This document shows, piece after piece, positions 1,202-59,105 of a stretch of 64,000 nucleotides of DNA (its first letter is position 1; every line of letters begins with the position of its first letter). Origin of the DNA: Perkinsela sp. CCAP 1560/9 (Eukaryota; Protista; Euglenozoa: Kinetoplastea); assembly GCA_965644495.1 (NCBI GenBank), contig CBFFSA010000009.1:310001-374000 (forward strand), given 5' to 3'. Below the pieces are notes generated by a model. That model worked only from the letters and a program-made list of their open reading frames with translations, did not search any database and had not been told where the DNA came from. The position numbers and the translations under genes are program-made.

Positions 1202-4200
1202 TTATACCCGTCCTTCTGTCCAAACGGCAGACTCACGGTTCTGCCAGATAATGAAACTGCCTCGAAGGGCGGTCTGCATTAGACTTTCTCGACATTTTTC
1301 CGCAAGCTTTGTGTCCTCGTCAAAGAGGAGGTTGAGGTTTCGACAAGATGTGAGTAACGAGCCGCGGGCTCCCACTTCGAATACAACAAGGGTCGTCCTA
1401 GGGTGATTAATGCGTCGTTCATGGAAGAGAGCATTATATTTACGGGATTTGCCCTCGTGCGCCTGAGACTGGTTCTCTTCCCAGGGCACAGTGAGCTCAA
1501 TGATGAACTCACTTCCATCCTTAAGTGTAATCAAACCGTCGGGGCGAAGAAGGTCCTCACTGGTGCCGAGCCATGCCGGGGCATTCCTAAATCCGGGGAT
1601 ATCTAGGTGTACGCTCTCGGTATACGGCGAACGCAGCAAGTGTTTTCCGAGCTCTTCAAGTAACATGTCATGACGGAGGGTGTATCTCCCTTGCTGAAGG
1701 GACTCTTTGCACCCCGAGAGCACGTGCCTTGTTGTTTGAGGTTCGAGTTTACATATGGGACATGTTACACTCGCACGCCGGAGACCCCAAAGCCGAAGAT
1801 TGGTTCTGGATGGTAGGGGTGAAAGCGTTAGTACTGAAGCTGCGAAGCGAGAAAGTTTTTCACTGTTGAGGTTGTTCAGGGCCGCTGAGAACTCTTTCGC
1901 GAGATCAGCCTCGGAGGGGAGGCTCCACCATTTTGCTGCTGTCGGTGCCCGTCTCTGAAGCTGATTTATGACGTAAGATTCATGGTTATCACGGGCTATC
2001 TGTTGCGCCTTCCGCGCGTCATGAAGGTGTTGAATGGCGTCAGCGCTTGGACGAATATAACCAGAGGATCGTTTTTCTTCTTCTTGCTTGATTCGGGCTC
2101 GTAGTGCCGCCTGTATCGATGGGTCCCGCGACTTGTGCATCTGTGTTAAGGCTAGGATAGAGCATTCGGACCACAGCTTGGATAAACTTTTAAGGTTCCA
2201 CCCTCGTTCAGTATAAAGAATTTCGGTGCAAGTCGTGGATGCTGCATTGATCCACTTCTTAAGGTGACGCGTAATTCTTTTCTGCAATCGCAATACAAAG
2301 TTGAAAGTGACACACGGGTGAACGGTGAGGGCGTAGCGCAGACGGGATACGATCGCTCTGTTGTAGATCCAAAGTTTTTCGGGGAGACTGTGTGCACTCT
2401 CGTCGACATTCCGAAGCCATGTTCTTAGTCTGACATCCAGCTTTTTGAAAAGTTCTTTCGCTTGCTGTGCTCCTGGTGCTATGGTCATTCCAAGAAAAGT
2501 GCTTCCACGGTCACATATATGTGGTATCGCTTTGCCTTCGATACTGAGTCTCGGCTTCCTGGTCATGTAACCCGGGTGCTCACTGCCTTCACGCATGGAC
2601 ATGCACTGTGTACGGCTCTTGTCTACGTTGATTGAGAGTCCTATTCGTCTCAGTGCAGTTTCGAGTGTGTTGGTCGCGTGCTGCATGTCGGTATCGCTGC
2701 TAGTCAGTATCGTCAGGTCGTCAACGTAGGCTTTCAGGAAATGCCTTGGAGTATCTGGGTAGTCAAGGCCATACCGGGGGCACGATTGCTTGAGGTATCG
2801 TAGTACAGTTTCCATCACTAAGTTGAAAATTATGGGCGACAGGGTATCACCTTGTAGTACGCCTCTGTGTATCGGTATAACACGTGACAAACCTTCGACA
2901 CACTTAATACGCATTTCCGCATGTGAATACATGCTTTCAACGTAGGACACGATTTGTGGCGAGACGTTTGCCCATCGCAGTGCCTCGAAGATGATGTTAT
3001 GGGGGACCGAGCCGAATGCATTGCTGAGATCAAACTGCGTGAGACAATATTGCCTTTTGTTTCGGCGGTAATATTGTAATATTTCGGAGAGAGCTTGCGT
3101 GTGTTCCAGTGTACCACTCATCTTCGGAAGAAAGCCTTTTTGAACGCTTGTATCTAGGAGGCCGGAGGACACGGTATGCGTCAAAATTTGGTGTCCGATC
3201 ATGCTATTGAAAAGTTTGCCTAGAGCGCTAGTCAGGGAGATAGGTCTCCAGTTTTTCGGGATGTGTTTTTCGCCTCCTTTGTGAATGAGTTTAACTACGG
3301 CGGAGGACCAGCATGGCGGGCAGACGCCGTAGCGCAGAAGATCATTAAACGTGTTCGCTATACGGGGGTACAGGTATTTGCATTATTTTAGAAGTGCGTT
3401 TGTAATCGTATCACGCCCTGGCGCGCTTGCGCTTCTTTTGCTGCTGAGCGCGTCTGCGACATCTTGCGCGGTCAGTGGAGACCATTCCATTTCGTTGATG
3501 GGTAGAGGACCAAGTACGTTGTTCGGCGGCAGGCGATGCTCTTCGGCGGGAGGTGCTGTGCTTTCTGTGAAATATTTTTCTATCGTAGGCAAATCGCATT
3601 CAGGATATTCGGCGGTGGCGGAGGTCGAGGGGCGGTCCAAGGCCTCGGATGCTGCTGTCCACGGGTTCCGCGTGAATCTGCTATGGGCCCATTGTCTTTC
3701 TAGCTGTTTCCTATGTGCTTTGGCCTCTTCTGTGTATGTTTTCTCTAGCTTCTCACTTTCCTTAATGCAGCGACGGAGCTCTTGGCGTTCCGTTCCGTGT
3801 GTGTAGCGTAGTGATTTCTTTTGGTTGCGTATGTGTTTCGTCATTTCGTGGGCTGCATTTTCAGACGAAAGTGGCCGGTGCTTGAATCGGGCGTGTCCGC
3901 GTTTCGATCGCGTGAGGAAACCTTTAGTGGGGTTAATCTCTTGTGCAATTTCGTATGCCGCCACTGCCAGAGAGGCACCCAGGAGTTCTGCGTTTTTCAC
4001 TGCGATTTCCGGGGTGTCTACTGTTGGATATTGCAGCCTTCGGCATGTATCGTATGCCTTGTTTTCAACCGCCTTCCATTGATCGTCGTTAAGCTTTAGG
4101 CACATTTTCCCCCCTGTTATGGTTTTGTGTTGTTCAAGCAGATGGAGGCGCTCCCTTTCGCTGGTTTCATCCCATGATGGAACTCGAAGTTCCGTAGTGT

Positions 4201-5788
4201 GCGAAGGAGGAGGAAGAGGAGAAGGTCGGACGAGGGGCTCATTGTACCTAAGCGGTCCATATATCTTACAGCATTTATGCAGACAGCGTAGCTTGGCCGA
4301 GCATCGGTGGCGACATGGTTCCACGTGTACGGTGTTCTGTGGGTAATGCGCTGCACTGCTAGGCGTCGCGTCAGGGAGTGGCGCAGGGTTGTGCATAGTG
4401 CTATCTTTGTTGTCAGTGCACGTCGCATCCGTTATTTGCACAGTATGTTGGTTCCCGTTTGTTGGTCCGTTGATGCTAGTATTGGGAAGGCGGTAGAAGT
4501 TTATAACGTTACGCATGGCCCAACCAGCCAATTTAGCAGCTTTCAGTAGGAAATCACTATCGTTGTCGTTGAGGTTTGGTGCTACGGAGTTCTGGTTGAC
4601 GTCGGCCCCCTCTGTTTGGGTTCCCTCGGCAGGTGGGACCATTTGGACATCAGGTGGAGGTTGTGTTGCCGGGTTTAACCCGCGTTCTAAAGTTGTATGA
4701 GCGCCCTCCCGTGATATTGCGTTGCATAGCTTCGTTTGTAGATTTTCATTTGTAGAAGTCGCGGAAGTTGGAAAGTCCAGATGCGAAGATTTAATGCCTC
4801 GTTTACAACATAGATGTCCGCACGTAGCTTTGTTCTTGCAGGAATGACGACATGGATGCGGGGCGGAAGGTTCATCATGTACGGTAGGTTTGCGGTGACC
4901 GTTCGACGCATGTGTGTTGCATTTTGTATGTGTCGCAGGTTCCGAAGAGGTGCTTTCCGGCGTATATTTACTTGGATCTCCTGGGTTGGTGTTATTTGCA
5001 GTTCCTTCTGGGACGATCTCAGGTGGCAGTGCTCCTTCTGATGAGCAATATGTAGCGTCCTCACTCGGCAGCGGTCCATAGATTTTACAGCACTTGTGAG
5101 CACAGGAGAGTTTGCTCAAGCAGCGGTGCTTGCATGGTCCCTTGTGTTGATCAGTTTTACCCTTCTGGGGCTTTGGCGTTCGTGGGGGAGCGATTTTATG
5201 AGGGGATTCTTCTATCCTGCGCGGCTTCTCGTATTCCGCGGTTTCAGTGCTTGGTGTTTCCTGGTTTCTTATGAGCTCGATTTTTATGTGCTTCAGTCCC
5301 GATATTTCTCTTCCCTGTATGGCCTTCAGGGCTGCCTTATTTAGCGTGCTTGGGGTGGAATACTTGTCTCGCAGGCTGAGGGCAGGGTCGGTGTGCATCG
5401 AGACCCAGTTTGGGTGCAGGGAGATGGTGTAGGGGTGTTCATTCCTCGTAACCTTTATATAGTCGCACGCGTTATGCTCCACGAGCTCCTCAAAGGTGGT
5501 GTGTTCAGCTACGAGATCGTGTGCTGATGCACACTTACTCAGCAGTTTCGTGATAGCTACTTCCGCACCTTGTCGGGATGGAATTCTTTGTCTGACTATG
5601 GACCATTGGCTCGCGGTCTTAATGTCCGGGAAATACGTCCAATGCAGGTCAGTGAGGCGTCGTATCTTAACGGGCCGTGATCTGCTGTGGACGAAGTGCA
5701 GGGTTTGCGTCTGTACGCCGCCGGAAGCTCGAGGGAGGTCCGGCAGCGCATCGTCAACATTCCGCGGAGAAGTGGGATTGTCGGACAT
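1202..5788 (-). pseudogene. Retrotransposon polyprotein (N-terminal domain, 3 Cys/His fingers, RT, CCHC knuckle, RLE) with one in-frame TAA
   Basis: ORFs 3383..5827 and 1202..3202 are in the same frame. The gap reads LLK*CKYL...KLIHKGG..NWRPISLTS, where the paralogs have K/R at the stop. Motifs: QGDTLSP, YVDD, CPIC-x8-H-x4-C, RPD..IIELTVPWEEN, K..KY, EVGARG. Likely ATG at 5788. Confidence 0.9.
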
Positions 5789-5821
5789 GTTGGAGATACA
5801 GTTTAGAAAAAAAAACAACAA

Positions 5822-5850
5822 CAACAAGGTACAGAAACTGTATCTTTATC
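5822..5850 (-). other. Spliced-leader-like exon fragment GATAAAGATACAGTTTCTGTACCTTGTTG
   Basis: Contains the conserved kinetoplastid/diplonemid SL core ACAGTTTCTGTAC and ends in TTG at the expected distance. It is not followed by a GT donor. Confidence 0.8.
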
Positions 5851-5851
5851 G

Positions 5852-6126
5852 TTGTGTTCTCTAGTGCCACTTGTACGTGTTCAGGGCGTAGCCCAAAAGC
5901 GCCACCCGATGACCCCCGGTGAAAAGTTGCAAGAGCCTGCGTTACGTCTTCCTCTGTGGCTCGTAGTGGTTTTGGTCCCATTTCCGTCGATGAACTGAGG
6001 GGTTTCACCGACGTAGCGAGTCGGGATGGATGCTTAGCTTGGAGTAGTAGTGTAGTTAGTGCCGGCCGGCAACGGGCATGAAAATACAGTAAGAGTATGC
6101 CCGTTGCCGGGGAAAGAAAGGATGAA
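5852..6126 (-). mobile_element. Short CRE-derived segment (14-bp hairpin leader plus RT N-terminal fragment)
   Basis: Perfect stem 6066-6079/6097-6110. Translation EEDVTQALATFHRGSSGGAFGLRPEH resembles the GSxGGxxGLRPxH motif at the start of CRE-clade RTs. Confidence 0.6.
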
Positions 6127-6155
6127 CAACAAGGTACAGAAACTGTATCTTTATC
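6127..6155 (-). other. Second identical spliced-leader-like 29-mer, at the outer 5' junction
   Basis: Exact copy of 5822-5850, abutting LRR codons GAT TTG GCG. Confidence 0.8.
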
Positions 6156-6661
6156 GCCAAATCTTCGAAGCAGTGCGGAAGAGAAGTCAGGTCCAACTCG
6201 CCTGCAAACCGATTTTCGTACAGAGTTAGTGATCGCAGTTCCGAAGGCAAGCGCGTGAGAGGCACTGTCCCTTCTAGCGCGTTCCCAAGCACATCAAAAT
6301 CGTACAAACTATGTGGGAGATAAATCAAGTTCATAGTACCTGACAAATCTCGTTGGGTCCATCTCACGTGGCTGACTTCTTCCCGCTCGTTACAACTCAC
6401 ACCTTCCCACTCGCATGCTGGCGTGTGAAGACTCCACGATTCGTCCAAGTTGTGGACTTCCGCGAGGAGACGAACGAGTTGATACTCTTGAGGTAAATTC
6501 GCAGCGCTCACTTTAGCAATACGCGATCTCGTCTTTGTAGTTTCTTCAGCAGAATGAGTGTTGGAAGGTATTGGGCTTTCGACTTTACGTCGTTTAGTCG
6601 ACGGTTCCTGAATATCCGAACATGTGAGCTGCACGATAGTGCGTAGGGTTAAGCGCCGCAT
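6155..6661 (-). pseudogene. 5' part of an interrupted LRR gene (NLS-like PSTKRRKVE)
   Basis: RIAKVSAANLPQEYQL and SW..TPACEWEGVSC motifs, two complete LRRs, and a third cut by the insertion. Confidence 0.88.
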
Positions 6662-42713: not shown

Positions 42714-42997
42714 TTACATAATGAAACAACCTCCACGCCTTTCTGTGTCAGATTTGATTTTCGTGTCCCTAATACACAAGGAGCGAGTCCCTACTACAAC
42801 GCCGCGCGGCAGTGTATTCGTGTTATATGTTCCTCGTAGGTTGACATTGTGATGTAAAAAAAGCTCGTGGATGCCGCACGGAAGATGCTCAAAGTGTAAA
42901 GCCAGTTGAAAGTCATTCCAAGAAAAACTCATGTGAGTCAAGGATCTGGGCATCTCTATGAAATCCAAGGTTCCTGAAAACGCGTTGAAAGCCATAT
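42714..42997 (-). pseudogene. 3' part of the LRR gene split by retrotransposon copy 2 (ends GCFIM, CAAX)
   Basis: MAFNAFSGTLDF...ERRGGCFIM is collinear with paralog 50014..50673. Confidence 0.9.
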
Positions 42998-45900
42998 ATA
43001 TGTTATCATGTAGAAAATATTCTACAGAGATTAGACGGTGAATATGGGAGTTCCATATTACGCGCACAAAACGCGTTGAAATCACCTGACAGTCAGCGAC
43101 TCATTCCTCAGAACTAACCTCCATCCACTGTTTGTTCTCGCGGTGCTGGAAAATTATGAAACTTCCCCGAAGAGCGCTAGTCGTCATATTTGGGCGACAC
43201 ACTGCAACCGCTTCTTCATTTCCCATGAAGAGAGAGTTGAGCGTTCGGGCCGACATATGCAGTTTGCCTCTCGCTCCCACCTCGAAGACGAATAGGAATG
43301 TGGTAGGACGGTCGAGTTTTCTAGAGTGATATAAACTCGTGTACTTTTCTATTTTGCGCTCGTGCGCGAACTCAAAGTTCTCCTCCCAAGGGCAGGTAAG
43401 TTCTATAATGTATTCTTCTCCGTTAGATAGTTTCACCCATCCGTCAGGACGTAGCTCAGTATCAAGGTTCGTGAGCCACGCGGGGGTGGAGCGGAAGTGG
43501 GGGAGATCGAAGTGACATTGACTAGTGGAGGAGAATCGTTGTACGGAGTTCGCTAATGCCTGTAGTACCATGTTATGCCGCAGGGCATACCTCCCTTGTC
43601 CGAGTGATTTCCTACAACCAGATAGAATATGCCGCGTAGTTTGTGTCTCGGTGTCACAGATGGGACATTTATCGCTCGCATGTGTCGATACGCCCCACCT
43701 ACGAAGAGACCCCCTGGTTGGGAGCGGCGTCTCGGTAAGCACTGAGGATGTGAACCGCGAAAGTGATTCACTCTTAAGGTTGCATAGGGCGGCGGCGAAG
43801 TCTCTCGCAAGGTCTGCTTCCGTTGCGATTCTGAACCATCGTCCTGCTACGGCAGTACGCCGTTGGACGGCTTCCGTGAGGTGTCGCTCGTATTCGCTTC
43901 CAAGGAGTCTTCGGACGTTACTATGGCTTGTACTGTGCATATCCGTCGGCGGGCGAATGTATCCTGCTCTCCTTTTGTTCGCTTCTCGCCTGATGCGCTC
44001 ACATAAAGCGTGCTGGACCTCGGGATCACGCGATTTATCCATTTGTTCCATTGTCCCCACAGTGGAAAGAAGCCAAAGTTTTGACAGACTCATGAGATTC
44101 CAGCCATGCTCTGAATAGAACAGCTCACTAGTTGCTGATTTCGCTACGTTTAACCATTTCCGAATTTCGCGTGTGGGGCATCGCTGTAGCCGAAGTACGT
44201 GATTGAAGGTAAGGCATGAGTTCACGACGAAGGAATACCGCAGACGAGAGATGATTCCGTTATTGTATATCCACAGGCGCGCGGGAAGATCATGTGCGCT
44301 GGAAGATATATTACGCAACCAGGCTCGCAGACGGGTTCGTAGTTTTAAAAAGAGTGTCTTGCCTTGTTGAGCACCGGGTGCGAGCGTCATGCCTAAAAAT
44401 ATGCTACCATTATCACATATGTGTGGGATAGGTGACGTGCCGATCATGATCTGTGGTCGGCGTGTCATATATCCAGAGTCTTGCGTCATCGCCATGTGTT
44501 GCAGCCGGCATTTTTTCACGTTTAGTTTCATCCCAATATCGCTTAGAACTTTGACGAGTGCGTTTGTAGCATTCTGCATTTCCTGGGGGGTATTTGTCAG
44601 AATAGTGAGGTCATCTGCGAAGGCTTTTAGAAAAATTTCTTTCGCATTCCACGTGATCCCGTATTCGGGGCAACTTGAACGGACAAAACGCAGAACTAGC
44701 TCCATCGCCAAGTTGAATAAAATAGGCGAAAGCGTATCTCCCTGCAATACACCACGACCTATCTCAATAGACTTCGTGAGTCCTTCTGCACATTTAATTT
44801 GTATAGACGCTCGTTCGTACAGCGCTTTGATGTAGTTAATGAGGATCGGTGAGACGCGCGCCCATTTTAAGGCCTGAAATAAAATTGTATGGGGTATGGA
44901 TCCAAACGCGTTTTTGATATCAAACTGGGCAAGCACGTATTGCCTTTTGTGGCGCCGCTGGTGCTCGAGGAGCTCGCAAAGAACCTGGGTGTGCTTAACT
45001 GTCCCATTCATATGCGGCAAGAAGCCTTTTTGTATTGTTGTATCCAGGGCATTGGAATCCAGGGAATGCTGAAGGATACGGTGACTGAGGATTGAGTGGA
45101 AAAGCTTCCCAATGCAGCTAGTCAAGCTTATCGGCCGCCAGTTTTCCATACTTGAGGTGGGGCCCCCTTTGTGGATAAGTCGAGTGACCGCAGTTTTCCA
45201 GGTTGGAGGGCATACACCAAATTTTAGGACATCATTAAACACCTGTGCCATGTGAGTAAAGAGAGGGGCGCAGCGCTTTAGCAGCGCGTTCGATACAGTG
45301 TCCGAGCCTGGGGCAGCCTCAGAGCGTTTGGATGCGACGGCTGCTGGGATCATGTCTGAGTCAATATCTGACCATTGCATCTCATCAAGGGGAATGGGTT
45401 TCGTAAATTCTGCGGGAGGAATCTTGTGTATCTCTTCTGGTCTAGACATTGAGCCCACAAAGAATCTTTCAACCTCCTGTACAGGAACTGTAGGGTAGGA
45501 CGTCTCAGTTTCTGAGGTAGATGGGTCGACGCGATCTAAGCATTCGCGCGCGGCTGTCCAGGGATTTCGCTGGAATCGCGTAAGAGCCCACCGTCGACCG
45601 ATTTCTTTCCTCTGCATACTGGATTCTTCCATGTACTGTTTTAGTGCCTTTTCGGCTTCCTTTATTTCCCCTCGTTGCTTGTTTCTCGCAGGACCCTTCA
45701 TGAACGTTAACGCACGTTTAAGTTGTCGAACGTGTTGACTGAGTACTTTCACTGTGCGTTCAATGGCTAAGGGTCGTGAGTTTCTTCGGGATCTGCCAGT
45801 TCTGGTCCGTATAAGAAAGCCGTGCGTCGGATCATTTTCCCGTGCGGCCTCGAATGCAGTTACAGCGAGGATTGCTGAGAGTATTTCAGCCTGCGACAGG

Positions 45901-47865
45901 GCGTCCTCTTTGTTTCGCGCCAGGTGGATGTACGAGTTGCAGCGCTCCTCGATCTTCGCAACCATACTCTCCCACTGTTCCTCTGTGAAACGGACTAGAA
46001 CGCGACCTCCATTTATTGTGTGGAATGTTTCGAGTAGGTTCTGCAGTACAGGGCGGGGTCGGGTAGCCGGGACTTGCCGGACACGAGGGATGCGCTGCAA
46101 TATCGTGTGTTCGCAGTTTCCTTCTGGTGGGGGAGGTAAAGGTAAAGGCAGAGGCGTGGGATCTGTTGCGGACTGCACAAGGGGTAAAGAAGGTGAGGAT
46201 CGGCGTACAGAAGCAGAATCATGTTGTGGGGCGTGGACAAGTGGTGCATTCCGTACAGGGCTCAGTATTGGACTCGAGCGATTCGAGGGGTTGGTGTGAA
46301 CTGGGGGGTAGGTTGTTGCGCGTGGAGGGGGCGGTAGTGAAGCTTTTGCGGCGCGTTCCGCATCACCCATTGCAGGGCACAGTATATTTCTCGTGGTCCA
46401 GCATATGGCAGAGTACGCTACTTCAGCGACTTTGAGGAGAACTCCTTTCTGGCAGCATTGATGTTTACATGTTGCCTTGTCCTTACATTTATGAGCGCAG
46501 TTGCGACGAGGCGCTGTTGGGGCAGGGGTGTTGTTGTCATTGCTGGTGTGCAGGTCTGGAGAGGTACGGACGGGTTCGCGGAGTACAACCTCCGTGCTAG
46601 GTTGTATGACACCATTTTTGCAACATCGATGCTTGCACTGAGCTTTGTTGCTACTTATGCGCCGACAGGGGTGATAATTGACTTCATTGGTTGATGTTTG
46701 TGTGTGGTGTGCGGCGTCATCCATGTATGCTAGTGAGGACAGATTTGCGGTCGGGAGCTCCGGATCCCTGACCTCTTCGAAGTGTCCGATGTCTGGTGTG
46801 GTATGCTGATCGGTGTCTATGGATAAGTCTGCTGGTAGTGGACTACTTGCTCGAGCTATGGGTGGTTCCACGAGGGGTAGCACTGGTTGAGGACTACTTT
46901 GGGCATCTGTAATGGGGACCCCCACTTTGCAACACTTGTGCAGACAATTTCTTTTGTCGCGGCATGTGTGTTTGCGCGGTCTTCTGTGAGAAGTAAGTGA
47001 GGGTTCCATAGGGGCAACGTCCTCCGGAGAGGGAAGAGACATGTTAGGCGAAAGAGATCCTTCGTGTCGTACATTGCAACATTCGTGAAGACACGATGTT
47101 TTGTCCCGGCATTTATGAGCGCATGGGGCACGTGGTTCGGAAGCGTGTTTTGAGGCATATGATGGCGGTGACACCTTGTAAGAGTCATCTCGGATCCTAT
47201 AGGGTGCGCCGTAGGTGATCTCTGGGTGACCCCGTAGTAGTTCAATGGGTTGTATTTTTTGAGTTACGTGTGTGATTTGGAATTTTCGTAATCCTGGGAT
47301 GTCACTACCACATAATTTCTTCGTGACCGCTTTGCCGAGCGCGTTCGAAGAGGAGTACACTGCGTTAAGCTGCATGAACGAATCCCTGTAGGCGGAACTC
47401 CAGCTGGCGTGACAAAACGTGCGACTTGGGTTTCCCGTTTCTTGGTATTTTAGGTGTTCACATGCGTTGTTTTCAATGACATCTTGAGTGGTACACGTTT
47501 GTACTATCAGACCATCACTTCTTTTGCTTTCCGACTTCAAGGATTTGCCGATCGAGGCTTCAACCATGTGGACACTCGAGAAGAACTCTCGTTCTGTGAG
47601 GGCAATGGCTGCGGCATGCGTGTCTGGGAAATATGACCATGTGACGCTGTCCGAGGGGCGGATTTTGACGGGCATCGCTCGACTTTGGATGAAGTGAAAG
47701 CTCTGGGGATGTCGCTGCGCGCTGACAGGTCCTCCAGGGGGGCCGTCGTGTGCGATGGGAGCCGGTGAGGTGACATTGGAGGCCATGCTTCGGAAGATAA
47801 AGTTAGTACAAAATTGAAAATAATTCAACAAGTTAAGAAACTGTATCTTTATAAGACGCTATCTT
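42998..47865 (-). mobile_element. Full-length RLE (HERO/NeSL-like) retrotransposon copy 2
   Basis: Flanked by the two halves of an LRR gene. SL-like head at 47826-47852, structured 3' UTR and no TSD. Confidence 0.92.
43101..47786 (-). CDS. Intact retrotransposon polyprotein (4 Cys/His fingers, RT, CCHC knuckle, RLE)
   Basis: Open frame with NWRPISL, QKGF, DIKNAF, QGDTLSP, FADD, CPIC..H..C, RPDGW, IIELTCPWEEN and EVGARG. Likely ATG at 47786. Confidence 0.93.
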   Translation of the reverse strand: MASNVTSPAPIAHDGPPGGPVSAQRHPQSFHFIQSRAMPVKIRPSDSVTWSYFPDTHAAAIALTEREFFSSVHMVEASIGKSLKSESKRSDGLIVQTCTTQDVIENNACEHLKYQETGNPSRTFCHASWSSAYRDSFMQLNAVYSSSNALGKAVTKKLCGSDIPGLRKFQITHVTQKIQPIELLRGHPEITYGAPYRIRDDSYKVSPPSYASKHASEPRAPCAHKCRDKTSCLHECCNVRHEGSLSPNMSLPSPEDVAPMEPSLTSHRRPRKHTCRDKRNCLHKCCKVGVPITDAQSSPQPVLPLVEPPIARASSPLPADLSIDTDQHTTPDIGHFEEVRDPELPTANLSSLAYMDDAAHHTQTSTNEVNYHPCRRISSNKAQCKHRCCKNGVIQPSTEVVLREPVRTSPDLHTSNDNNTPAPTAPRRNCAHKCKDKATCKHQCCQKGVLLKVAEVAYSAICWTTRNILCPAMGDAERAAKASLPPPPRATTYPPVHTNPSNRSSPILSPVRNAPLVHAPQHDSASVRRSSPSLPLVQSATDPTPLPLPLPPPPEGNCEHTILQRIPRVRQVPATRPRPVLQNLLETFHTINGGRVLVRFTEEQWESMVAKIEERCNSYIHLARNKEDALSQAEILSAILAVTAFEAARENDPTHGFLIRTRTGRSRRNSRPLAIERTVKVLSQHVRQLKRALTFMKGPARNKQRGEIKEAEKALKQYMEESSMQRKEIGRRWALTRFQRNPWTAARECLDRVDPSTSETETSYPTVPVQEVERFFVGSMSRPEEIHKIPPAEFTKPIPLDEMQWSDIDSDMIPAAVASKRSEAAPGSDTVSNALLKRCAPLFTHMAQVFNDVLKFGVCPPTWKTAVTRLIHKGGPTSSMENWRPISLTSCIGKLFHSILSHRILQHSLDSNALDTTIQKGFLPHMNGTVKHTQVLCELLEHQRRHKRQYVLAQFDIKNAFGSIPHTILFQALKWARVSPILINYIKALYERASIQIKCAEGLTKSIEIGRGVLQGDTLSPILFNLAMELVLRFVRSSCPEYGITWNAKEIFLKAFADDLTILTNTPQEMQNATNALVKVLSDIGMKLNVKKCRLQHMAMTQDSGYMTRRPQIMIGTSPIPHICDNGSIFLGMTLAPGAQQGKTLFLKLRTRLRAWLRNISSSAHDLPARLWIYNNGIISRLRYSFVVNSCLTFNHVLRLQRCPTREIRKWLNVAKSATSELFYSEHGWNLMSLSKLWLLSTVGTMEQMDKSRDPEVQHALCERIRREANKRRAGYIRPPTDMHSTSHSNVRRLLGSEYERHLTEAVQRRTAVAGRWFRIATEADLARDFAAALCNLKSESLSRFTSSVLTETPLPTRGSLRRWGVSTHASDKCPICDTETQTTRHILSGCRKSLGQGRYALRHNMVLQALANSVQRFSSTSQCHFDLPHFRSTPAWLTNLDTELRPDGWVKLSNGEEYIIELTCPWEENFEFAHERKIEKYTSLYHSRKLDRPTTFLFVFEVGARGKLHMSARTLNSLFMGNEEAVAVCRPNMTTSALRGSFIIFQHRENKQWMEVSSEE

Positions 47866-48241
47866 TAAGACGCTGCAGATCCCTGGGTAATGCGTCTAAC
47901 CTGACTTCGCCCATGAGATCGTTTGAGTAAAGTTCCAACGCAAGTACGGTTACGGGCAAATGTTCCCAACGTAGCGTACCTCGTAGATTGCCTCCCCGGA
48001 TAATGCGAGAGTATGTTTCGCATGCCGAGTTCATATCATGCCAATCGATTCTTTCAACATTTTGTGCATCATTGCAACGTACTCCGTACCACTCACACGC
48101 TGGAGTCAAAGTGGTTTTGAAATTACTACTCGACGGCATAGAAACGATTCCAAGAAATCGAAGTATCAGAATTTCAGCTGGAAGATGTGCATTCATACGC
48201 CCCAGACGTAGCGGTGTCGTATCCGCGTTTCGCTCAAACAT
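47866..48241 (-). pseudogene. 5' part of the interrupted CAAX-type LRR gene
   Basis: MFERNADTTPLRLGRMNAHLP...LPRDLQRL. Rejoining the halves gives CGT CTT AAT ATG GCT (RLNMA). Confidence 0.9.
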
Positions 48242-49040
48242 TACGTAGGTGTGCAAGGAAAAGGAATAACGTTTTTCGTAAAAAGGAACAATAATTTTTG
48301 AAAACTCTGAACAATAATCTGAATGTAACGACCAAAACAAATTGTATTGAATGACAACTGAACGCATATTGAAACATTCTCGTGCACCTAATAGTGACCT
48401 GCACGAAATATAACTTGTTCTATAATACATGTATCTTAAAAAACGAATTGTAGACCACAAATATAGAATTAAATCTTAATAAGATATAAAAATTATATAT
48501 AAGACTTATAATTTTCATAAAGAAAAGAAAAATATAAGGATAAAAGAAAACATCAAATCGATTAGAGGATTGATTGTCTAAATCTTCTGGAATGTTCTAA
48601 AGTTTCTTCCTCTTCAGAATCTTCTTTCTCGTCTTCCGCAAAATGAAAAATCAGTTCTTCTTCGGCGTACAGTATATAAATAGAATATAGAAACAAACTG
48701 ACAGTGATGTTATCACTGTAAATTAAATTTGTAACTAATTTCCAGCAAAAAGATAAAGCACAAAAAATATGTACACGTATTGTTTTCATAGATAGTGCTT
48801 GAACGGTTAAGGTTCAACCTCAATAATAGTACCATAATAAATCAGTTTTTGTACAGTTTTTGTAGTTTTACGGACCTCTGAATTATTGTGTGATATAATC
48901 AGACAAAAGTTTTTTTCTTCGAAAAAAATAGAAATGCGCAAAAAAAGTAGTTTGTGTATAGTGCGCCAAAAAGTAGCATATTTACAGTTTCTGAAGTTTT
49001 TCAACCCGTGATCGAAAGCCGGCGGTACATTATCACTGAG

Positions 49041-50013: not shown

Positions 50014-50673
50014 TTACATAATAAGACAACTCCCACGCCGTTCTGTGACAGATTTGATTTTTGTGTCCCTAATAAAAAATGTACCCGTGCCTATTATAAC
50101 GCCTGTTGGCAGCTTATCCGCATTATATTTTCCCTGTAGGTTTACATTATCATTTAAGAAGAGCTCGTGGATCCCGCGCGGAAGATGCTCAAAGTGTAAA
50201 GCCAGTTGAAAGTAATTCCTTGAAAAGTTCAGATGAGTCAGTGTTTTGGGCATGTCTGTGAAATCCAAGGTTCCTGAAAACGAATTCCATGATAGGTTAA
50301 GGCGCTGCAGATCCCTGGGTAATGCGTCTAACCTGACTTCGCCCCTGAGATCGTTTGAATAAAGTTCCAACCAAAGTACGGTTACGGGCAAATGTTCCCA
50401 ACGTAGCGTACCTCGTAGATTACCTCCCCAGAAAACGTCAGGGTACGCTTTGCATGCCGAGTTCATATCATGCCAATCGATCCTTTCAACATTTTGTGCA
50501 TCATTGCAACGTACTCCGTACCACTCACATGCTGGAATCGATGTGGTTTTATAAAGGTTGCTCGAGGGCATATCAACTTTTTCAAGAAATCGAAGCAACA
50601 TATTTTCAGGTGGAAGATGTGCATTCACACGTCCCAGACGTGGCGGTGTCGTATCCGAGTTTCGCATAAACAT
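50014..50673 (-). CDS. LRR-only protein, CAAX subfamily (ends SCLIM)
   Basis: RLGRVNAHLPPE, PACEWYGVRC, 4 LRRs and ERRGSCLIM. Confidence 0.9.
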   Translation of the reverse strand: MFMRNSDTTPPRLGRVNAHLPPENMLLRFLEKVDMPSSNLYKTTSIPACEWYGVRCNDAQNVERIDWHDMNSACKAYPDVFWGGNLRGTLRWEHLPVTVLWLELYSNDLRGEVRLDALPRDLQRLNLSWNSFSGTLDFTDMPKTLTHLNFSRNYFQLALHFEHLPRGIHELFLNDNVNLQGKYNADKLPTGVIIGTGTFFIRDTKIKSVTERRGSCLIM

Positions 50674-50768
50674 TACGTAGGCGTGCAAGGAAAAGGAATA
50701 ACGTTTTTTGTAAAAAGGAACAATAATCTGAATGTAACGACCGAAACAAATTGTATTGAATGACAACT

Positions 50769-56060: not shown

Positions 56061-56120
56061 ATTTATAACCATAAGTATTGCCCTGTATGTTGTAGTTGAG
56101 ACAGCTGCCACAAACTGTTT

Positions 56121-59105
56121 TTGCGTATGCAAAAAGCAGTAGAACTCCTGCAAAAGCACAATGCAATACTTGGCGGGAAGGTTACCATACGACTCAGCGA
56201 AGAGCAATGGCGACAGGTTGAAGCGAGAGCAAGTGCACGTTGCAACGAACTTCTAAGCGATACAACGGACAGGAAGACAGCTATACGTAACGCGGAACTT
56301 CTTAGCGCCGCCCTAGCCGTATCTGCTTGCGAAATAGCGACGGAAGCGAATCCGACAAGGGGCTTCCTCATCAGAGCTAGCACCGGACACGCCCGACGAA
56401 GGTATCGACCACTCGCCACGGAGAGAGTCGCACAAGAACTGAAACACCATCTCACAACCTTGAAAACTTCGCTACGCTATACGAGAAGTAGGACGGAACG
56501 AGACGAATTACGAGCACAAATCAAAGAATGTCGAAAGCTAGTCAGGATACGTGAGGAAGAAGCGACGAAACAAAGAGAAGAATTCGATCAGCACTGGGCC
56601 TCCGAGAGATTTTCCAGAAATCCGTGGACAGCAGCTTCAGAAACGATCGACAAACCTGACGCTAATGAAGTACAGAATGCAACTTACCCGACCTGTGACC
56701 GGAACACCATAGAGACATACTACGAGTCAAGCTTTAAACCCAGTGAACAACTCTTCCAACTGCCTCCTCCAGATGTACTCGGACCAGGAGCCGCCCAACC
56801 CATGCATTGGGACCCAATCACGCGAGACGATGTCACAGCAGCCATCAATATGAAACGGAACTCCAGCTCACCCGGTGCAGACACGATCACCAATCTGATT
56901 CTTAAAAAATGTCCATCCATGCATGATCAATTTGCTAAGGTATTCAATAATCTGATGACTTTCTCGACCTGCCCTCCATCATGGAAAACTGCAATCACTA
57001 AGCTGATACATAAGAGCGGAGCACCGGAAAACCCCAAAAATTGGCGCCCCATTTCACTGACGAGCGCCCTTGGTAAAGCGTTCCACACAATCATATCGCA
57101 TCGCCTGACCCAACATCTTATTGGACACAATGTGATTGACCCGGAAATACAGAAAGGGTTTCTTTCCGAAATCAATGGGATATTGGAGCACACCCAAACT
57201 CTATGCACCCTCCTCCAGCACTACCAGCGACATAAACGACAGTACTGTCTTGCCCAATTGGACCTCACTAACGCCTTTGGTTCGATCCCGCATAACATTA
57301 TACTAGCTTCCCTAGCTTGGGCAGGCATACCCTGCAACGTTGTCGACTACATCAAAGACAGCCTCACTGATGCACACATACGAGTTAAATGTTACGAAGG
57401 TCTAACGCGTCCCATACATGTAAAGAAGGGAGTCTTACAAGGCGATACACTCTCCTCCACTATATTCTTAGTAGTCATGGAAATCGTATTACGATACGTT
57501 CGGTTCTCGTGTCCAACCTTTGGCATGCGCCTTCCCAACGGCGATAACAACTTCTTGAAAGCGTATGCCGATGATTTAACCATTCTGACCGAAAGTGACC
57601 GTGACATGCAAACTTCGCTGAACGCACTAACCACGGTGCTCTCCAAAATCGGATTAAAAATCAACGTCACAAAAAGTCGAGTCCAATGTATGAGCACGCG
57701 GAAAGGCGAAGAGCACCCGGGGTACATGACGAGAAGACCTGCAGTAACCACATACGGAGAAAAAATTCCACATATTTGCGACGCCGGAAGCTCATTTCTT
57801 GGTATGACCCTCGCCCCTGGATCTCAGCAGCTAAACGAACTTTTCAATAAATTAAACTCAAAGCTGAAAGGATGGCTTGAAAACACGAGTGCCAGCGCCC
57901 ATAATCTCCCGGCTAAGCTGTGGATCTACACACACGCTATAATTTCCCGACTTCGGTTTCAGTTTACCATCCACCCCTGCATCTCTTTCAGCTCAGTTCT
58001 GCGGCTTCAGAAGCGAGTCACAGCACACATTCGACGATGGATTAACATGGCTCGTGCCGGTAGCACAGAAGTACTATACTCCTGCGGCGGCTGGAATCTC
58101 AAAAGTCTGACACAACTCTGGTACGAGTGCACCGGAACGTCACTTACCCAAATGCATCAATCACGAGACCCGAACGTGCTCAAGGCATTGCGCTTCCGCA
58201 TCCAGGAAGAGCAAAGGAAGCGTGCGAAAGGTCAAATCCGCCCAGGTGCACAAATAACCGATCATCTTAACGACCCACAGCGCGCACGACAAATACTCCG
58301 TGATGCCCACGAAGAACAAATGATTACACGTCTACGACAACGTGCTCCTGTTGCTGCCCTCTGGTGGCAGTTTCCGTCAGACCCAGAAATGGCACAAGAA
58401 TTTGTATCTGCCATCCATGGGATCCGAAACGAGAAACTCTCGCGATTCATGTCCTTCGTCATGACTCTAACCCCCCTGCCCTCCCGAGTATCCCTTGCAC
58501 AATGGGGTCGCAACTATCACTCTGATACAAAATGTCCCATATGCCGAGACAAACCACAAACAACAAGACACGTCCTTTCATCATGCAACACATCCTTACA
58601 AAAAGGGAGGTACACACTAAGACACGACATGGTTCTCCGCGAGTTCGCACGACACGTACGCCAATCCCCTACCACCGAAGCTTGCCACTTTGACCTCACG
58701 GGTGAACGGAACCCACCCCCGTGGTACACCAGTAGCGACAGTTTACTGCGCCCGGATGGCTGGATCAAACTACGGAACGGGACCGAGTTCATCATTGAGC
58801 TAACTGTTCCGTGGGAGGAGAACTGTGAAAACGCACACCGGCGGAAGTCAGAGAAGTATAACTTACTTCTCCACGAGCGCAGAATCGAGAACCCGAACTG
58901 CTACGCCCTAGCGTTCGAGATCGGCGCACGGGGACTTCCTAGCGGATCCTGTCGCTATCTTGACGCCGTGTTCCAAGGGGAACGAAAACGAGCCAGATCA
59001 TGCAGAGAAAGCATGAGTTTAATGGCTGGTCGGGCCAGCTATATTATCTGGGCTCGGAGGAACGAAGCTGAATGGACGGACGAGGAAAACCGCTCTGCTT
59101 GCTAA
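56121..59105 (+). CDS. 5'-truncated RLE retrotransposon copy 3: open RT-knuckle-RLE frame
   Basis: 994-aa open frame collinear with copies 1 and 2 from GGKV onward, with YADD, CPIC, RPDGW and IIELTVPWEEN. Lacks the N-terminal fingers. 3' UTR runs to ~59183. Confidence 0.9.
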   Translation: MRMQKAVELLQKHNAILGGKVTIRLSEEQWRQVEARASARCNELLSDTTDRKTAIRNAELLSAALAVSACEIATEANPTRGFLIRASTGHARRRYRPLATERVAQELKHHLTTLKTSLRYTRSRTERDELRAQIKECRKLVRIREEEATKQREEFDQHWASERFSRNPWTAASETIDKPDANEVQNATYPTCDRNTIETYYESSFKPSEQLFQLPPPDVLGPGAAQPMHWDPITRDDVTAAINMKRNSSSPGADTITNLILKKCPSMHDQFAKVFNNLMTFSTCPPSWKTAITKLIHKSGAPENPKNWRPISLTSALGKAFHTIISHRLTQHLIGHNVIDPEIQKGFLSEINGILEHTQTLCTLLQHYQRHKRQYCLAQLDLTNAFGSIPHNIILASLAWAGIPCNVVDYIKDSLTDAHIRVKCYEGLTRPIHVKKGVLQGDTLSSTIFLVVMEIVLRYVRFSCPTFGMRLPNGDNNFLKAYADDLTILTESDRDMQTSLNALTTVLSKIGLKINVTKSRVQCMSTRKGEEHPGYMTRRPAVTTYGEKIPHICDAGSSFLGMTLAPGSQQLNELFNKLNSKLKGWLENTSASAHNLPAKLWIYTHAIISRLRFQFTIHPCISFSSVLRLQKRVTAHIRRWINMARAGSTEVLYSCGGWNLKSLTQLWYECTGTSLTQMHQSRDPNVLKALRFRIQEEQRKRAKGQIRPGAQITDHLNDPQRARQILRDAHEEQMITRLRQRAPVAALWWQFPSDPEMAQEFVSAIHGIRNEKLSRFMSFVMTLTPLPSRVSLAQWGRNYHSDTKCPICRDKPQTTRHVLSSCNTSLQKGRYTLRHDMVLREFARHVRQSPTTEACHFDLTGERNPPPWYTSSDSLLRPDGWIKLRNGTEFIIELTVPWEENCENAHRRKSEKYNLLLHERRIENPNCYALAFEIGARGLPSGSCRYLDAVFQGERKRARSCRESMSLMAGRASYIIWARRNEAEWTDEENRSAC

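What the first reader, a model, noticed from the sequence alone, without database searches (positions are those of the whole stretch)
46445..47130. Tandem CxHxCx5CxHxCC (Mer3/HFM1-like) fingers replace C2H2/Myb in the retrotransposon N-terminus
Seen: copy 2 has CAHKCRDKTSCLHECC, RKHTCRDKRNCLHKCCKVG, CRRISSNKAQCKHRCCKNG and CAHKCKDKATCKHQCCQKG. Copy 1 has three (about 5085-5140, 4800-4860 and 4260-4320, e.g. CRHSCKNKATCGHLCCKRG). They are separated by variable Pro/Ser/Thr-rich linkers. Known: R2/NeSL/CRE proteins use C2H2 fingers, with or without Myb, in this position. From memory, this Cys/His spacing with CKxK..C.H.CCK.G matches the C-terminal zinc finger of the meiotic helicase Mer3/HFM1. 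Inference: a captured, copy-number-variable targeting module for DNA, chromatin or recombination intermediates. I do not know it from described retrotransposons.
Basis: partly seen in the sequence, partly recalled or inferred. Interest (0 to 1): 0.85.

Follow-up and report, generated by a model that had tools for sequence, protein, structure and literature searches.

The report
HFM1-type zinc fingers in a retrotransposon
A family of R2-like jumping genes in what looks like a kinetoplastid protist carries, where such elements normally have C2H2/Myb DNA-binding motifs, one to six copies of the small Cys/His finger otherwise found at the tail of the meiotic helicase Mer3/HFM1, which gives this uncharacterised finger a second, testable context.

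Summary
The window holds seven CxHxCx5CxHxCC units, all in frame in two retrotransposon copies. Five are intact. Two units in copy 2 have lost ligand residues.

A profile of 57 fingers from this genome, searched against 1.84 billion proteins, found 194 hits. All 13 long single-finger hits that I checked are Mer3/HFM1-architecture helicases with the finger just after the Sec63 domain, for example gar and mite HFM1 and Blastocladiella MER3.

The carrier is an R2-like element with RT, a CCHC knuckle and a restriction-like endonuclease. No C2H2 or Myb was detected. It is abundant and diversified in this 21-Mb genome, with 1-6 fingers per element.

The host looks like a kinetoplastid. Its own Mer3 homologue lacks the finger, as do the trypanosomatid and prokinetoplastid ones. 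More distant RLE relatives carry UCH, OTU or C2H2 modules instead.

The functional reading is inferred, not shown: a zinc-binding arm that binds nucleic acid and positions the element on target DNA. Insertions favour LRR genes in sense orientation (12 of 29), but flanks differ within one subfamily.

No Pfam family, solved structure or paper was found for this finger in a retrotransposon. Two first-reader notes report the same finger type on other pieces of this genome.

The parts
43101..47831 (-). Copy 2: uninterrupted 1576-aa ORF of an R2-like (RLE) non-LTR retrotransposon
   Evidence: ORF list. Pfam RVT_1 E 2e-33. Best solved relative is R2Bm 8gh6, E 8.7e-34, with query 772-1433 aligned to R2Bm 344-976.
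47076..47123 (-). Finger 1 of copy 2, intact (C-H-C-C-H-C-C)
   Evidence: Regex. Profile score 38.0 bits.
46929..46976 (-). Finger 2 of copy 2, decayed: first Cys is Arg
   Evidence: The relative L002 has Cys at this position.
46620..46667 (-). Finger 3 of copy 2, decayed: first His is Arg and second Cys is Ser
   Evidence: The relative L002 is intact here.
46452..46499 (-). Finger 4 of copy 2, intact; the last finger before the RT-proximal helical region
   Evidence: 39.0 bits.
47127..47741 (-). Conserved N-terminal region (aa 31-235) upstream of the fingers, with no known family
   Evidence: 28% identity to copy 1, E 1e-31. No Pfam match. Atlas look-alikes are only weak, score 0.84.
45132..46109 (-). 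Helical region between the last finger and RT (aa 575-900); resembles the LINE N-terminal extension
   Evidence: AF2 pLDDT 82. Weak matches to R2 and L1 ORF2p only. No Myb shown.
44496..45176 (-). Reverse transcriptase domain (aa 886-1112)
   Evidence: Pfam RVT_1.
43104..43781 (-). CCHC knuckle plus restriction-like endonuclease (RHN, PD, E-L-T and K..KY motifs)
   Evidence: Family profile A4 hits the C-terminus of R2 proteins (9nl2 residues 918-1111), E 1.8e-7. zf-RVT weak match.
3383..5827 (-). Copy 1, N-terminal ORF with three intact fingers (5087-5134, 4805-4852, 4268-4315)
1202..3202 (-). Copy 1, RT-CCHC-RLE part, separated from the N-terminal ORF by a break
   Evidence: Pfam RVT_1 E 1.3e-26.
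47867..48310 (-). Upstream half of the LRR gene interrupted by copy 2 (LRR aa 9-156)
   Evidence: tblastn with the intact paralogue 50017-50766.
42717..42995 (-). Downstream half of the same LRR gene (LRR aa 158-250)

Best explanation
The motifs are units of a small Cys/His metal-binding finger: P-C-x-H-x-C-x2-K-x2-C-x-H-x-C-C-K-x-G. Seven ligand positions are invariant. By profile the finger is the same as the one that follows the Sec63 domain in Mer3/HFM1 helicases of animals and fungi.

Here it is the repeated N-terminal module of an abundant, diversified family of single-ORF R2-like (RT + CCHC + RLE) non-LTR retrotransposons in a probable kinetoplastid. It sits where R2, NeSL, Utopia and CRE elements carry C2H2 and/or Myb.

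Shown:
- The motif exists and is conserved.
- It is equivalent to the Mer3/HFM1 finger.
- The carrier is an RLE LINE.
- The finger number varies from 1 to 6.
- C2H2 and Myb are not detected.
- The finger is absent from the host's own Mer3 homologue.

Inferred:
- Each unit binds zinc. Seven ligands suggest two ions with a shared Cys, or one ion plus extras.
- The lysine-rich array, strung on flexible Pro/Ser/Thr linkers, binds nucleic acid. It most likely docks the RNP on target DNA so that the RLE nicks and RT primes there (target-primed reverse transcription).
- The number and sequence of units tune target choice.
For: Motif and conservation:
- There are 57 distinct intact fingers in this genome, with C8 H10 C12 C18 H20 C22 C23 invariant and K15 and K24 above 90%.
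- An ungapped profile scan that does not require the ligands finds 84 distinct units. 68 have all seven ligands.

Mer3/HFM1 link:
- The profile search of 1.84e9 proteins gives 194 hits at E<=1e-3.
- 13 of the 13 long single-finger hits tested have DEAD + Helicase_C + wHTH + one Sec63, with the finger just downstream. Four fragments show the same.
- Source names are HFM1 (Lepisosteus, Oppia), MER3 (Blastocladiella) and DNA 3'-5' helicase/Sec63 proteins of fungi and Strigamia.
- hhalign of the TE profile against the helicase profile gives 99.1% probability, E 5e-19.

Carrier:
- RVT_1.
- R2Bm is the best solved relative, aligned through the thumb, linker and CCHC.
- The C-terminal profile hits R2 CCHC+RLE at E 1.8e-7.

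Position and function:
- All fingers lie N-terminal of the R2Bm-aligned part.
- In R2 that region is the ZF/Myb DNA-binding globular domain, present with variable numbers in all early-branching LINEs (PMC5678591).
- More distant RLE relatives swap the N-terminus for UCH, OTU or C2H2, so this end is a modular, exchangeable arm.

Genome-wide:
- There are at least 150 finger matches in the genome.
- Every finger-bearing ORF inspected is part of, or followed by, an RT ORF.
- 12 of 29 3' junctions continue into an LRR gene in sense orientation.
- A single finger folds with pLDDT 81.
Against: - No metal or nucleic-acid binding was tested.
- The function of the Mer3/HFM1 finger itself is not described in the papers I could search.
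- Four close copies of the copy-2 subfamily have unrelated 3' flanks, so strict sequence-specific targeting is not shown.
- The LRR bias could come from tolerance of insertions in a very large, dense gene family rather than from recognition.
- Copy 2 keeps an open frame although two of its four fingers are decayed. Either not all fingers are needed or this copy is dead.
- The helicase set used for hhalign was chosen by the TE profile, so that statistic is circular.
- With only about 20 informative positions, convergence cannot be excluded.
- No PDB fold match was found for the finger model.
Confidence: 0.6

Rival explanations
1. The fingers are RNA-binding or nucleic-acid-chaperone knuckles. 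They would play the role of gag CCHC knuckles or the C2H2 pair of L1Tc, binding the element's own transcript or assisting strand annealing during TPRT, rather than choosing the DNA target.
For: - The units are short, lysine/arginine-rich knuckle-like motifs on disordered linkers.
- L1Tc C2H2 fingers of a trypanosome LINE act as sequence-independent chaperones (PMC5814959).
- Flanks of close copies differ, which fits the absence of strict DNA sequence recognition.
Against: - In R2-type single-ORF elements, RNA binding maps to the -1/0 region and RT, and the N-terminal ZF/Myb binds DNA (PMC5678591).
- The element already has the linker CCHC knuckle.
- The insertion bias to LRR genes in sense orientation suggests some target choice.
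Confidence: 0.2
2. The fingers are a protein- or structure-directed tether. As in Mer3/HFM1, they would recognise a recombination or replication intermediate (D-loop, flap or nick) or a partner protein, bringing the element to branched or broken DNA rather than to a sequence.
For: - The only other established context is a helicase that acts on recombination intermediates.
- Flanks are diverse within a subfamily.
- Arrays of weak binders on flexible linkers suit avidity for structures.
Against: - No function is documented for the helicase finger.
- The RLE makes its own nick, so no pre-existing lesion is needed.
- The host Mer3 homologue lacks the finger, so there is no evidence that a partner exists in this organism.
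Confidence: 0.1
3. The likeness to Mer3/HFM1 is convergence. On this reading, two unrelated short Cys/His knuckles arrived at the same spacing, and nothing about one informs the other.
For: - The unit is only about 22 residues long, and most of its score comes from seven Cys/His.
- There is no donor in the host lineage.
- All named helicase carriers are opisthokonts, far from a kinetoplastid.
Against: - Non-ligand positions also agree: D/N-K before the third Cys, and K and G/hydrophobic residues after CC.
- Among 1.84e9 proteins, every long hit whose domains I checked was either a Mer3/HFM1-type helicase or an RT-bearing protein; the short hits and several 600-1000-aa hits with no Pfam domain are unclassified.
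- Yeast Mer3 proteins also duplicate the unit in tandem.
Confidence: 0.12

Closest known systems
C-terminal zinc finger of the meiotic helicase Mer3/HFM1 (Ski2-like, single Sec63 cassette)
   Same: Both have the same C-x-H-x-C-x5-C-x-H-x-C-C core with K before the third Cys and K-x-G after CC. The TE profile retrieves these helicases. Some yeasts have two units in tandem.
   Different: In the helicase there are one or two units, placed after the Sec63 domain of a host enzyme. Here there are 1-6 units at the N-terminus of a retrotransposon protein. The host's own Mer3 homologue has none. The function of the helicase finger is not established. Human variants in it are linked to azoospermia (PMC8383409).
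R2 retrotransposon N-terminal ZF/Myb DNA-binding domain
   Same: Both have a single ORF in the order N-terminal arm, RT, CCHC, RLE. In both, the arm precedes the RT N-terminal extension, and the number of fingers varies between lineages (PMC5678591).
   Different: The finger chemistry is C2H2 in R2 and a seven-ligand CHCCHCC unit here. No Myb was detected. R2 is strictly 28S-specific, whereas these copies lie in LRR genes and other sites.
CRE clade (CRE1/2, SLACS, CZAR) RLE LINEs of kinetoplastids
   Same: The host group is the same (probable kinetoplastid). Both are RLE LINEs with 1-2 ZF-like motifs (PMC12278014).
   Different: CRE elements insert at one position of spliced-leader genes, and CZAR fingers are C2H2 (PMC5814959, PMC12278014). 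No trypanosomatid protein appeared among 81 RT-RLE homologues. RT phylogeny was not done.
NeSL/Utopia and unnamed metagenomic RLE LINEs with swapped N-terminal modules
   Same: They follow the same principle: the N-terminus of RLE LINEs is modular. Examples are Ulp1 protease and RNase H in NeSL/Utopia (PMC4640811), and UCH, OTU or C2H2 in relatives at 24-31% identity.
   Different: None of those relatives carries this finger.

Membership tests
RLE-type (R2-like) non-LTR retrotransposon | Reverse transcriptase of the LINE type | tested here: met
   Pfam RVT_1 E 2e-33. R2Bm 8gh6 E 8.7e-34.
RLE-type (R2-like) non-LTR retrotransposon | CCHC knuckle and PD-(D/E)xK restriction-like endonuclease downstream of RT | tested here: met
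   Family profile A4 hits R2 residues 918-1111 of 9nl2 at E 1.8e-7. The C..C/H....C, RH(D/N), PD, E-L-T and K..KY columns are conserved. The single sequence alone gave no hit.
RLE-type (R2-like) non-LTR retrotransposon | N-terminal C2H2 finger(s) and/or Myb | tested here: not met
   No Pfam zinc-finger or Myb family was found at E<=10 in the N-terminal regions. The fold of aa 575-900 shows no Myb match. A different finger type occupies this place.
RLE-type (R2-like) non-LTR retrotransposon | Site-specific insertion | tested here: inconclusive
   12 of 29 3' flanks are sense LRR-gene remainders. However, four close copies have unrelated flanks.
Mer3/HFM1-type zinc finger | C-x-H-x-C-x5-C-x-H-x-C-C core with conserved K and K-x-G context | tested here: met
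   The invariant columns are identical in the TE set A1 and the helicase set A2. Cross-retrieval at E 4e-7 to 3e-4. hhalign 99.1% (partly circular).
Mer3/HFM1-type zinc finger | Located after the Sec63 domain of a Ski2-like helicase | tested here: not met
   Here it lies in a retrotransposon N-terminus. The genome's Mer3-like helicase (DEAD, Helicase_C, wHTH, Sec63) has no finger.
Mer3/HFM1-type zinc finger | Binds zinc | not testable with these tools
   Only the AF2 model is available (pLDDT 81). No solved structure was found by sequence or by fold.
CRE clade (SLACS/CZAR/CRE) | Insertion in spliced-leader RNA genes | tested here: not met
   Window copies 1 and 2 split LRR genes. Other flanks are LRR genes or unrelated sequence.
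CRE clade (SLACS/CZAR/CRE) | RT groups with CRE elements in phylogeny | not tested
   No CRE reference sequence was available from the tools. No trypanosomatid hit appeared among 81 homologues.

The most novel reading that the evidence does not exclude
The Mer3/HFM1 finger is an autonomous module that recognises a DNA structure (nick, flap or D-loop). This retrotransposon family has multiplied it to hold the RNP on the nicked target or second-strand intermediate during TPRT. The TE arrays would then reveal the long-unknown role of the helicase finger, in which human infertility variants lie.
Probability: 0.12. Interest if true: 0.85.

Novelty: new variant of a known kind. Interest (0 to 1): 0.6.

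Why it matters
RLE LINEs such as R2 are now being engineered for site-specific gene insertion, and their N-terminal arm sets the target. A new, compact, repeatable finger type in that position widens the known repertoire of targeting modules.

It also gives the Mer3/HFM1 finger a second natural context. That finger has no Pfam model, no solved structure and no assigned function. This genome alone supplies dozens of sequence variants in arrays of 1-6, which makes it ready material for binding, metal-stoichiometry and structural work.

The finger is absent from kinetoplastid Mer3 and present in the kinetoplastid's retrotransposons. This raises a question about its origin: ancient shared module, horizontal arrival of the element, or convergence.

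Tried and rejected
Searches that gave nothing:
- Pfam on the finger regions and on single fingers. Only a chance-level Colipase match at E 0.06 appeared.
- PDB by sequence, with the 250-aa region and with the 57-finger profile.
- Word-indexed search of 5.8e9 proteins with region 235-480. 612 candidates, none at E<=0.01.
- ESM Atlas features for one finger, and for the N-terminal 205 aa only weak CFAP77 look-alikes at 0.84.
- Fold search with the AF2 finger model, by Foldseek and by VIA-align against 48,161 chains. No match, as expected for 30 residues.

Myb: the AF2 model of aa 575-900 gave only weak R2/L1 ORF2p N-terminal-extension matches (Foldseek E 0.04; Z 9 at rmsd 12 Å). These neither show nor exclude a degenerate Myb.

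Donor: the resident Mer3-like gene (G000:C1, locus L047 838-5469) has no finger in its 1544-aa ORF or in any frame of 8 kb. None of about 45 single-cassette homologues has one, except one EukProt protein of unknown taxon.

Strict target site: rejected for the copy-2 subfamily, because the flanks diverge right after the shared 3' end.

Sequencing runs: only coded DNA holders from one study and no RNA run were found, so expression is unknown.

Literature: no paper was found that links this finger to a retrotransposon.

Not available: Repbase could not be searched. RT phylogeny against named clades was not done, for lack of reference sequences.
Full report
**1. Observation**

The minus strand of the window carries an uninterrupted 1576-aa ORF (43101-47831, 'copy 2'). 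It also carries a second, broken copy ('copy 1') made of 3383-5827 and 1202-3202.

A six-frame regex and a profile scan find seven units of the pattern C-x-H-x-C-x5-C-x-H-x-C-C. All seven lie in these two reading frames.
- Copy 2 has intact units at 47076-47123 and 46452-46499.
- Copy 2 has decayed units at 46929-46976 (Cys1 to Arg) and 46620-46667 (His to Arg, Cys to Ser).
- Copy 1 has three intact units, at 5087-5134, 4805-4852 and 4268-4315.

The strict pattern occurs five times in the window and never in 200 shuffles. Linkers are 33-163 aa and enriched in Pro/Ser/Thr: 0.28-0.40 against about 0.2 elsewhere.

**2. The carrier**

- Pfam finds RVT_1 in both copies.
- The best solved relative of copy 2 is the Bombyx R2 protein (8gh6, E 8.7e-34). 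It aligns from the RT N-terminal extension through thumb, linker and CCHC (query 772-1433 to R2Bm 344-976).
- A profile of the C-terminal 226 aa of this family and its relatives hits the CCHC + restriction-like endonuclease end of R2 proteins (9nl2 918-1111, E 1.8e-7). The C..C/H....C, RH(D/N), PD, E-L-T and K..KY columns are conserved.

So this is a single-ORF RLE LINE. All fingers lie N-terminal to the R2-aligned part. In R2 that part of the protein is the ZF/Myb DNA-binding globular domain, described as present with variable numbers of ZF and Myb in all early-branching LINEs (PMC5678591).

No C2H2 or Myb family is detected here. An AF2 model of aa 575-900 (pLDDT 82) gives only weak matches to the N-terminal extension of R2 and L1 ORF2p. 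A conserved region of about 200 aa precedes the fingers and matches nothing known.

**3. How widespread in this genome**

The window is part of a 21-Mb, 110-contig assembly.
- The finger region finds 99 places in the assembly.
- The finger profile finds at least 150 places out of 262 candidates.
- Long open frames of 1500-1860 aa carry 2-6 fingers, and all have RVT_1.
- Six further loci, picked because no RT hit was listed nearby, also turned out to have an RT ORF right after the finger ORF.

I found no finger outside a retroelement.

From 57 distinct intact fingers, the invariant columns are C8 H10 C12 C18 H20 C22 C23. K15 and K24 are above 90%, and Pro precedes the first Cys in 46 of 57.

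A scan that does not demand the ligands finds 84 distinct units. 68 are intact and 16 have 1-3 ligand substitutions, mostly in copies with broken frames. Relatives of copy 2 have intact ligands where copy 2 is decayed, and they carry hits of their own elsewhere. This is what neutral decay after insertion looks like.

The last finger before the RT has its own conserved flavour in several subfamilies (CCK-I/V-Y/F-G-P).

**4. The Mer3/HFM1 link**

I tested it without using any helicase sequence.

The 57-finger profile (A1) was run against 1.84 billion representative proteins. It gave 194 hits at E<=1e-3.
- The top hits are this genome's own elements and many short metagenomic fragments with 2-5 fingers.
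- All 13 long proteins with a single finger near the C-terminus (E 4e-7 to 3e-4) have DEAD, Helicase_C, the SNRNP200-type winged helix and one Sec63 domain, with the finger just after Sec63.
- Four shorter fragments show the same.
- Their source names are HFM1 (spotted gar, an oribatid mite), MER3 (Blastocladiella) and 'DNA 3'-5' helicase'/'Sec63' (Synchytrium, Spizellomyces, Halteromyces, Kappamyces, Quaeritorhiza, Pichia, Candida boidinii, Strigamia).

The helicase fingers share the seven ligand columns and K15. Profile-profile comparison gives 99.1%, E 5e-19. That number is inflated, because the helicase set was chosen by the TE profile.

Pichia and C. boidinii Mer3 have two fingers in tandem.

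A paper on human HFM1 places infertility variants (C1157Y, Q1164X) in 'the zinc finger motif' (PMC8383409). I found no paper on what the finger does. Pfam has no model for it: the helicases show no family at that position.

**5. The host and the missing donor**

The genome encodes a single-cassette Ski2-like/Sec63 helicase (locus L047 838-5469; Pfam).
- Its best named relatives are annotated HFM1/MER3 from strains PhM-4 and PhF-6 (45-48% identity), followed by Trypanosoma and Leishmania.
- PhM-4 and PhF-6 are free-living Prokinetoplastina (PMC7859406).
- Long intron-free frames and one-directional gene arrays fit a kinetoplastid as well. This rests on one gene, so I put it at about 0.75.

This helicase has no finger. 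Nor do about 45 single-cassette homologues, including all the kinetoplastid ones. So the resident Mer3 is not the donor. The origin may be an ancient module, an incoming element or convergence. This remains open.

**6. Relatives of the element**

Over RT-CCHC-RLE, only the closest proteins (42-78% identity, all from ENA assemblies) have the finger. Relatives at 24-31% identity over the full length instead carry UCH (PF00443), OTU or C2H2, or nothing.

The N-terminus is thus an exchangeable module, as already known for NeSL and Utopia with Ulp1 protease and RNase H (PMC4640811).

The known kinetoplastid RLE LINEs (CRE clade) insert in spliced-leader genes, and CZAR fingers are C2H2 (PMC12278014, PMC5814959).

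**7. Target choice**

Copy 2 splits an LRR gene cleanly. LRR aa 9-156 lie upstream (47867-48310) and aa 158-250 lie downstream (42717-42995), in sense orientation. Copy 1 also lies in an LRR gene.

With an LRR profile, 12 of 29 3' junctions from several divergent subfamilies run into an LRR-gene remainder in sense orientation. None of the immediately adjacent remainders is antisense.

The LRR family is huge: 1852 first-look candidates, and about a quarter of this window. Four close copies of the copy-2 subfamily have unrelated flanks right after the shared 3' end, one of them a TA repeat.

So there is a bias, not a fixed site. Tolerance of insertions in a dispensable family within one-directional transcription units is a fair alternative to recognition.

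**8. Reading**

Shown:
- The motif is real and strongly constrained.
- It equals the Mer3/HFM1 finger at profile level.
- It stands in the N-terminal arm of an RLE LINE.
- Its copy number is variable.

Inferred:
- It binds zinc. Seven invariant ligands suggest a two-metal cluster with one shared Cys.
- It binds nucleic acid. Most likely it helps to dock the RNP on target DNA, as R2's ZF/Myb does (0.6).

Rivals are an RNA-binding or chaperone role (0.2), a structure- or partner-directed tether as might apply in Mer3 (0.1), and convergence rather than homology (0.12, a separate axis).

**9. Novelty**

This is a new variant of a known kind: a known element architecture with a finger type not reported in retrotransposons in Pfam, the PDB or the searchable literature. 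Repbase could not be checked. Two first-reader notes (s1-673039, s1-683065) describe the same finger type on other pieces of this genome, which agrees with the genome-wide counts above.

Only natural copies and domain-level alignments were used.

Noticed in passing
window 42717-42995, 47867-48310, 6122-6652, 1003-1116; loci L049-L063: Copies of several divergent subfamilies sit inside small LRR genes in sense orientation (12 of 29 3' junctions). The window itself holds about 25 LRR genes, nearly all on the minus strand. Flanks of four close copies nevertheless differ.
   Followed up: partly
L047:838-5469 (G000:C1:946337-950968): The host's Mer3/HFM1-like helicase (DEAD, Helicase_C, wHTH, one Sec63) has no finger. 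Its closest named relatives are prokinetoplastid transcriptome proteins, then Trypanosoma and Leishmania, which points to a kinetoplastid host.
   Followed up: partly
window 47127-47741 (-) and 5126-5827 (-): A region of about 200 aa upstream of the fingers is conserved between copies 1 and 2 (28% identity, E 1e-31). It has no Pfam family, and the Atlas look-alikes are only weak.
   Followed up: partly
P0189, P0192, P0193, P0196, P0199-P0202, P0207, P0212, P0220, P0195: Metagenomic RLE-LINE relatives at 24-31% identity carry a ubiquitin hydrolase (UCH, PF00443), OTU (PF02338) or C2H2 domains at the N-terminus instead of these fingers.
   Followed up: no
P0035:972-1014, P0041:1023-1067: Mer3 of Pichia californica and Candida boidinii has two of these fingers in tandem, separated by about 11-13 residues.
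   Followed up: no
window about 56080-59084 (+): A third copy of the family (RT-RLE part 50% identical to copy 2, open frame 1001 aa) has no finger unit in the profile scan. It is probably 5'-truncated.
   Followed up: no
P0026 (JGI metagenome, 735 aa): This protein has RVT_1 at 174-445 and two fingers at 675 and 714, that is, downstream of the RT. It is either a different architecture or a read-through into the next element on a short contig.
   Followed up: no
window 43000-43100 (-); L056, L057, L067: The copy-2 subfamily shares a 3' UTR of about 100 nt that ends in ...GATAACATA with no poly(A). One relative (L067) continues into a (TA)n repeat.
   Followed up: partly
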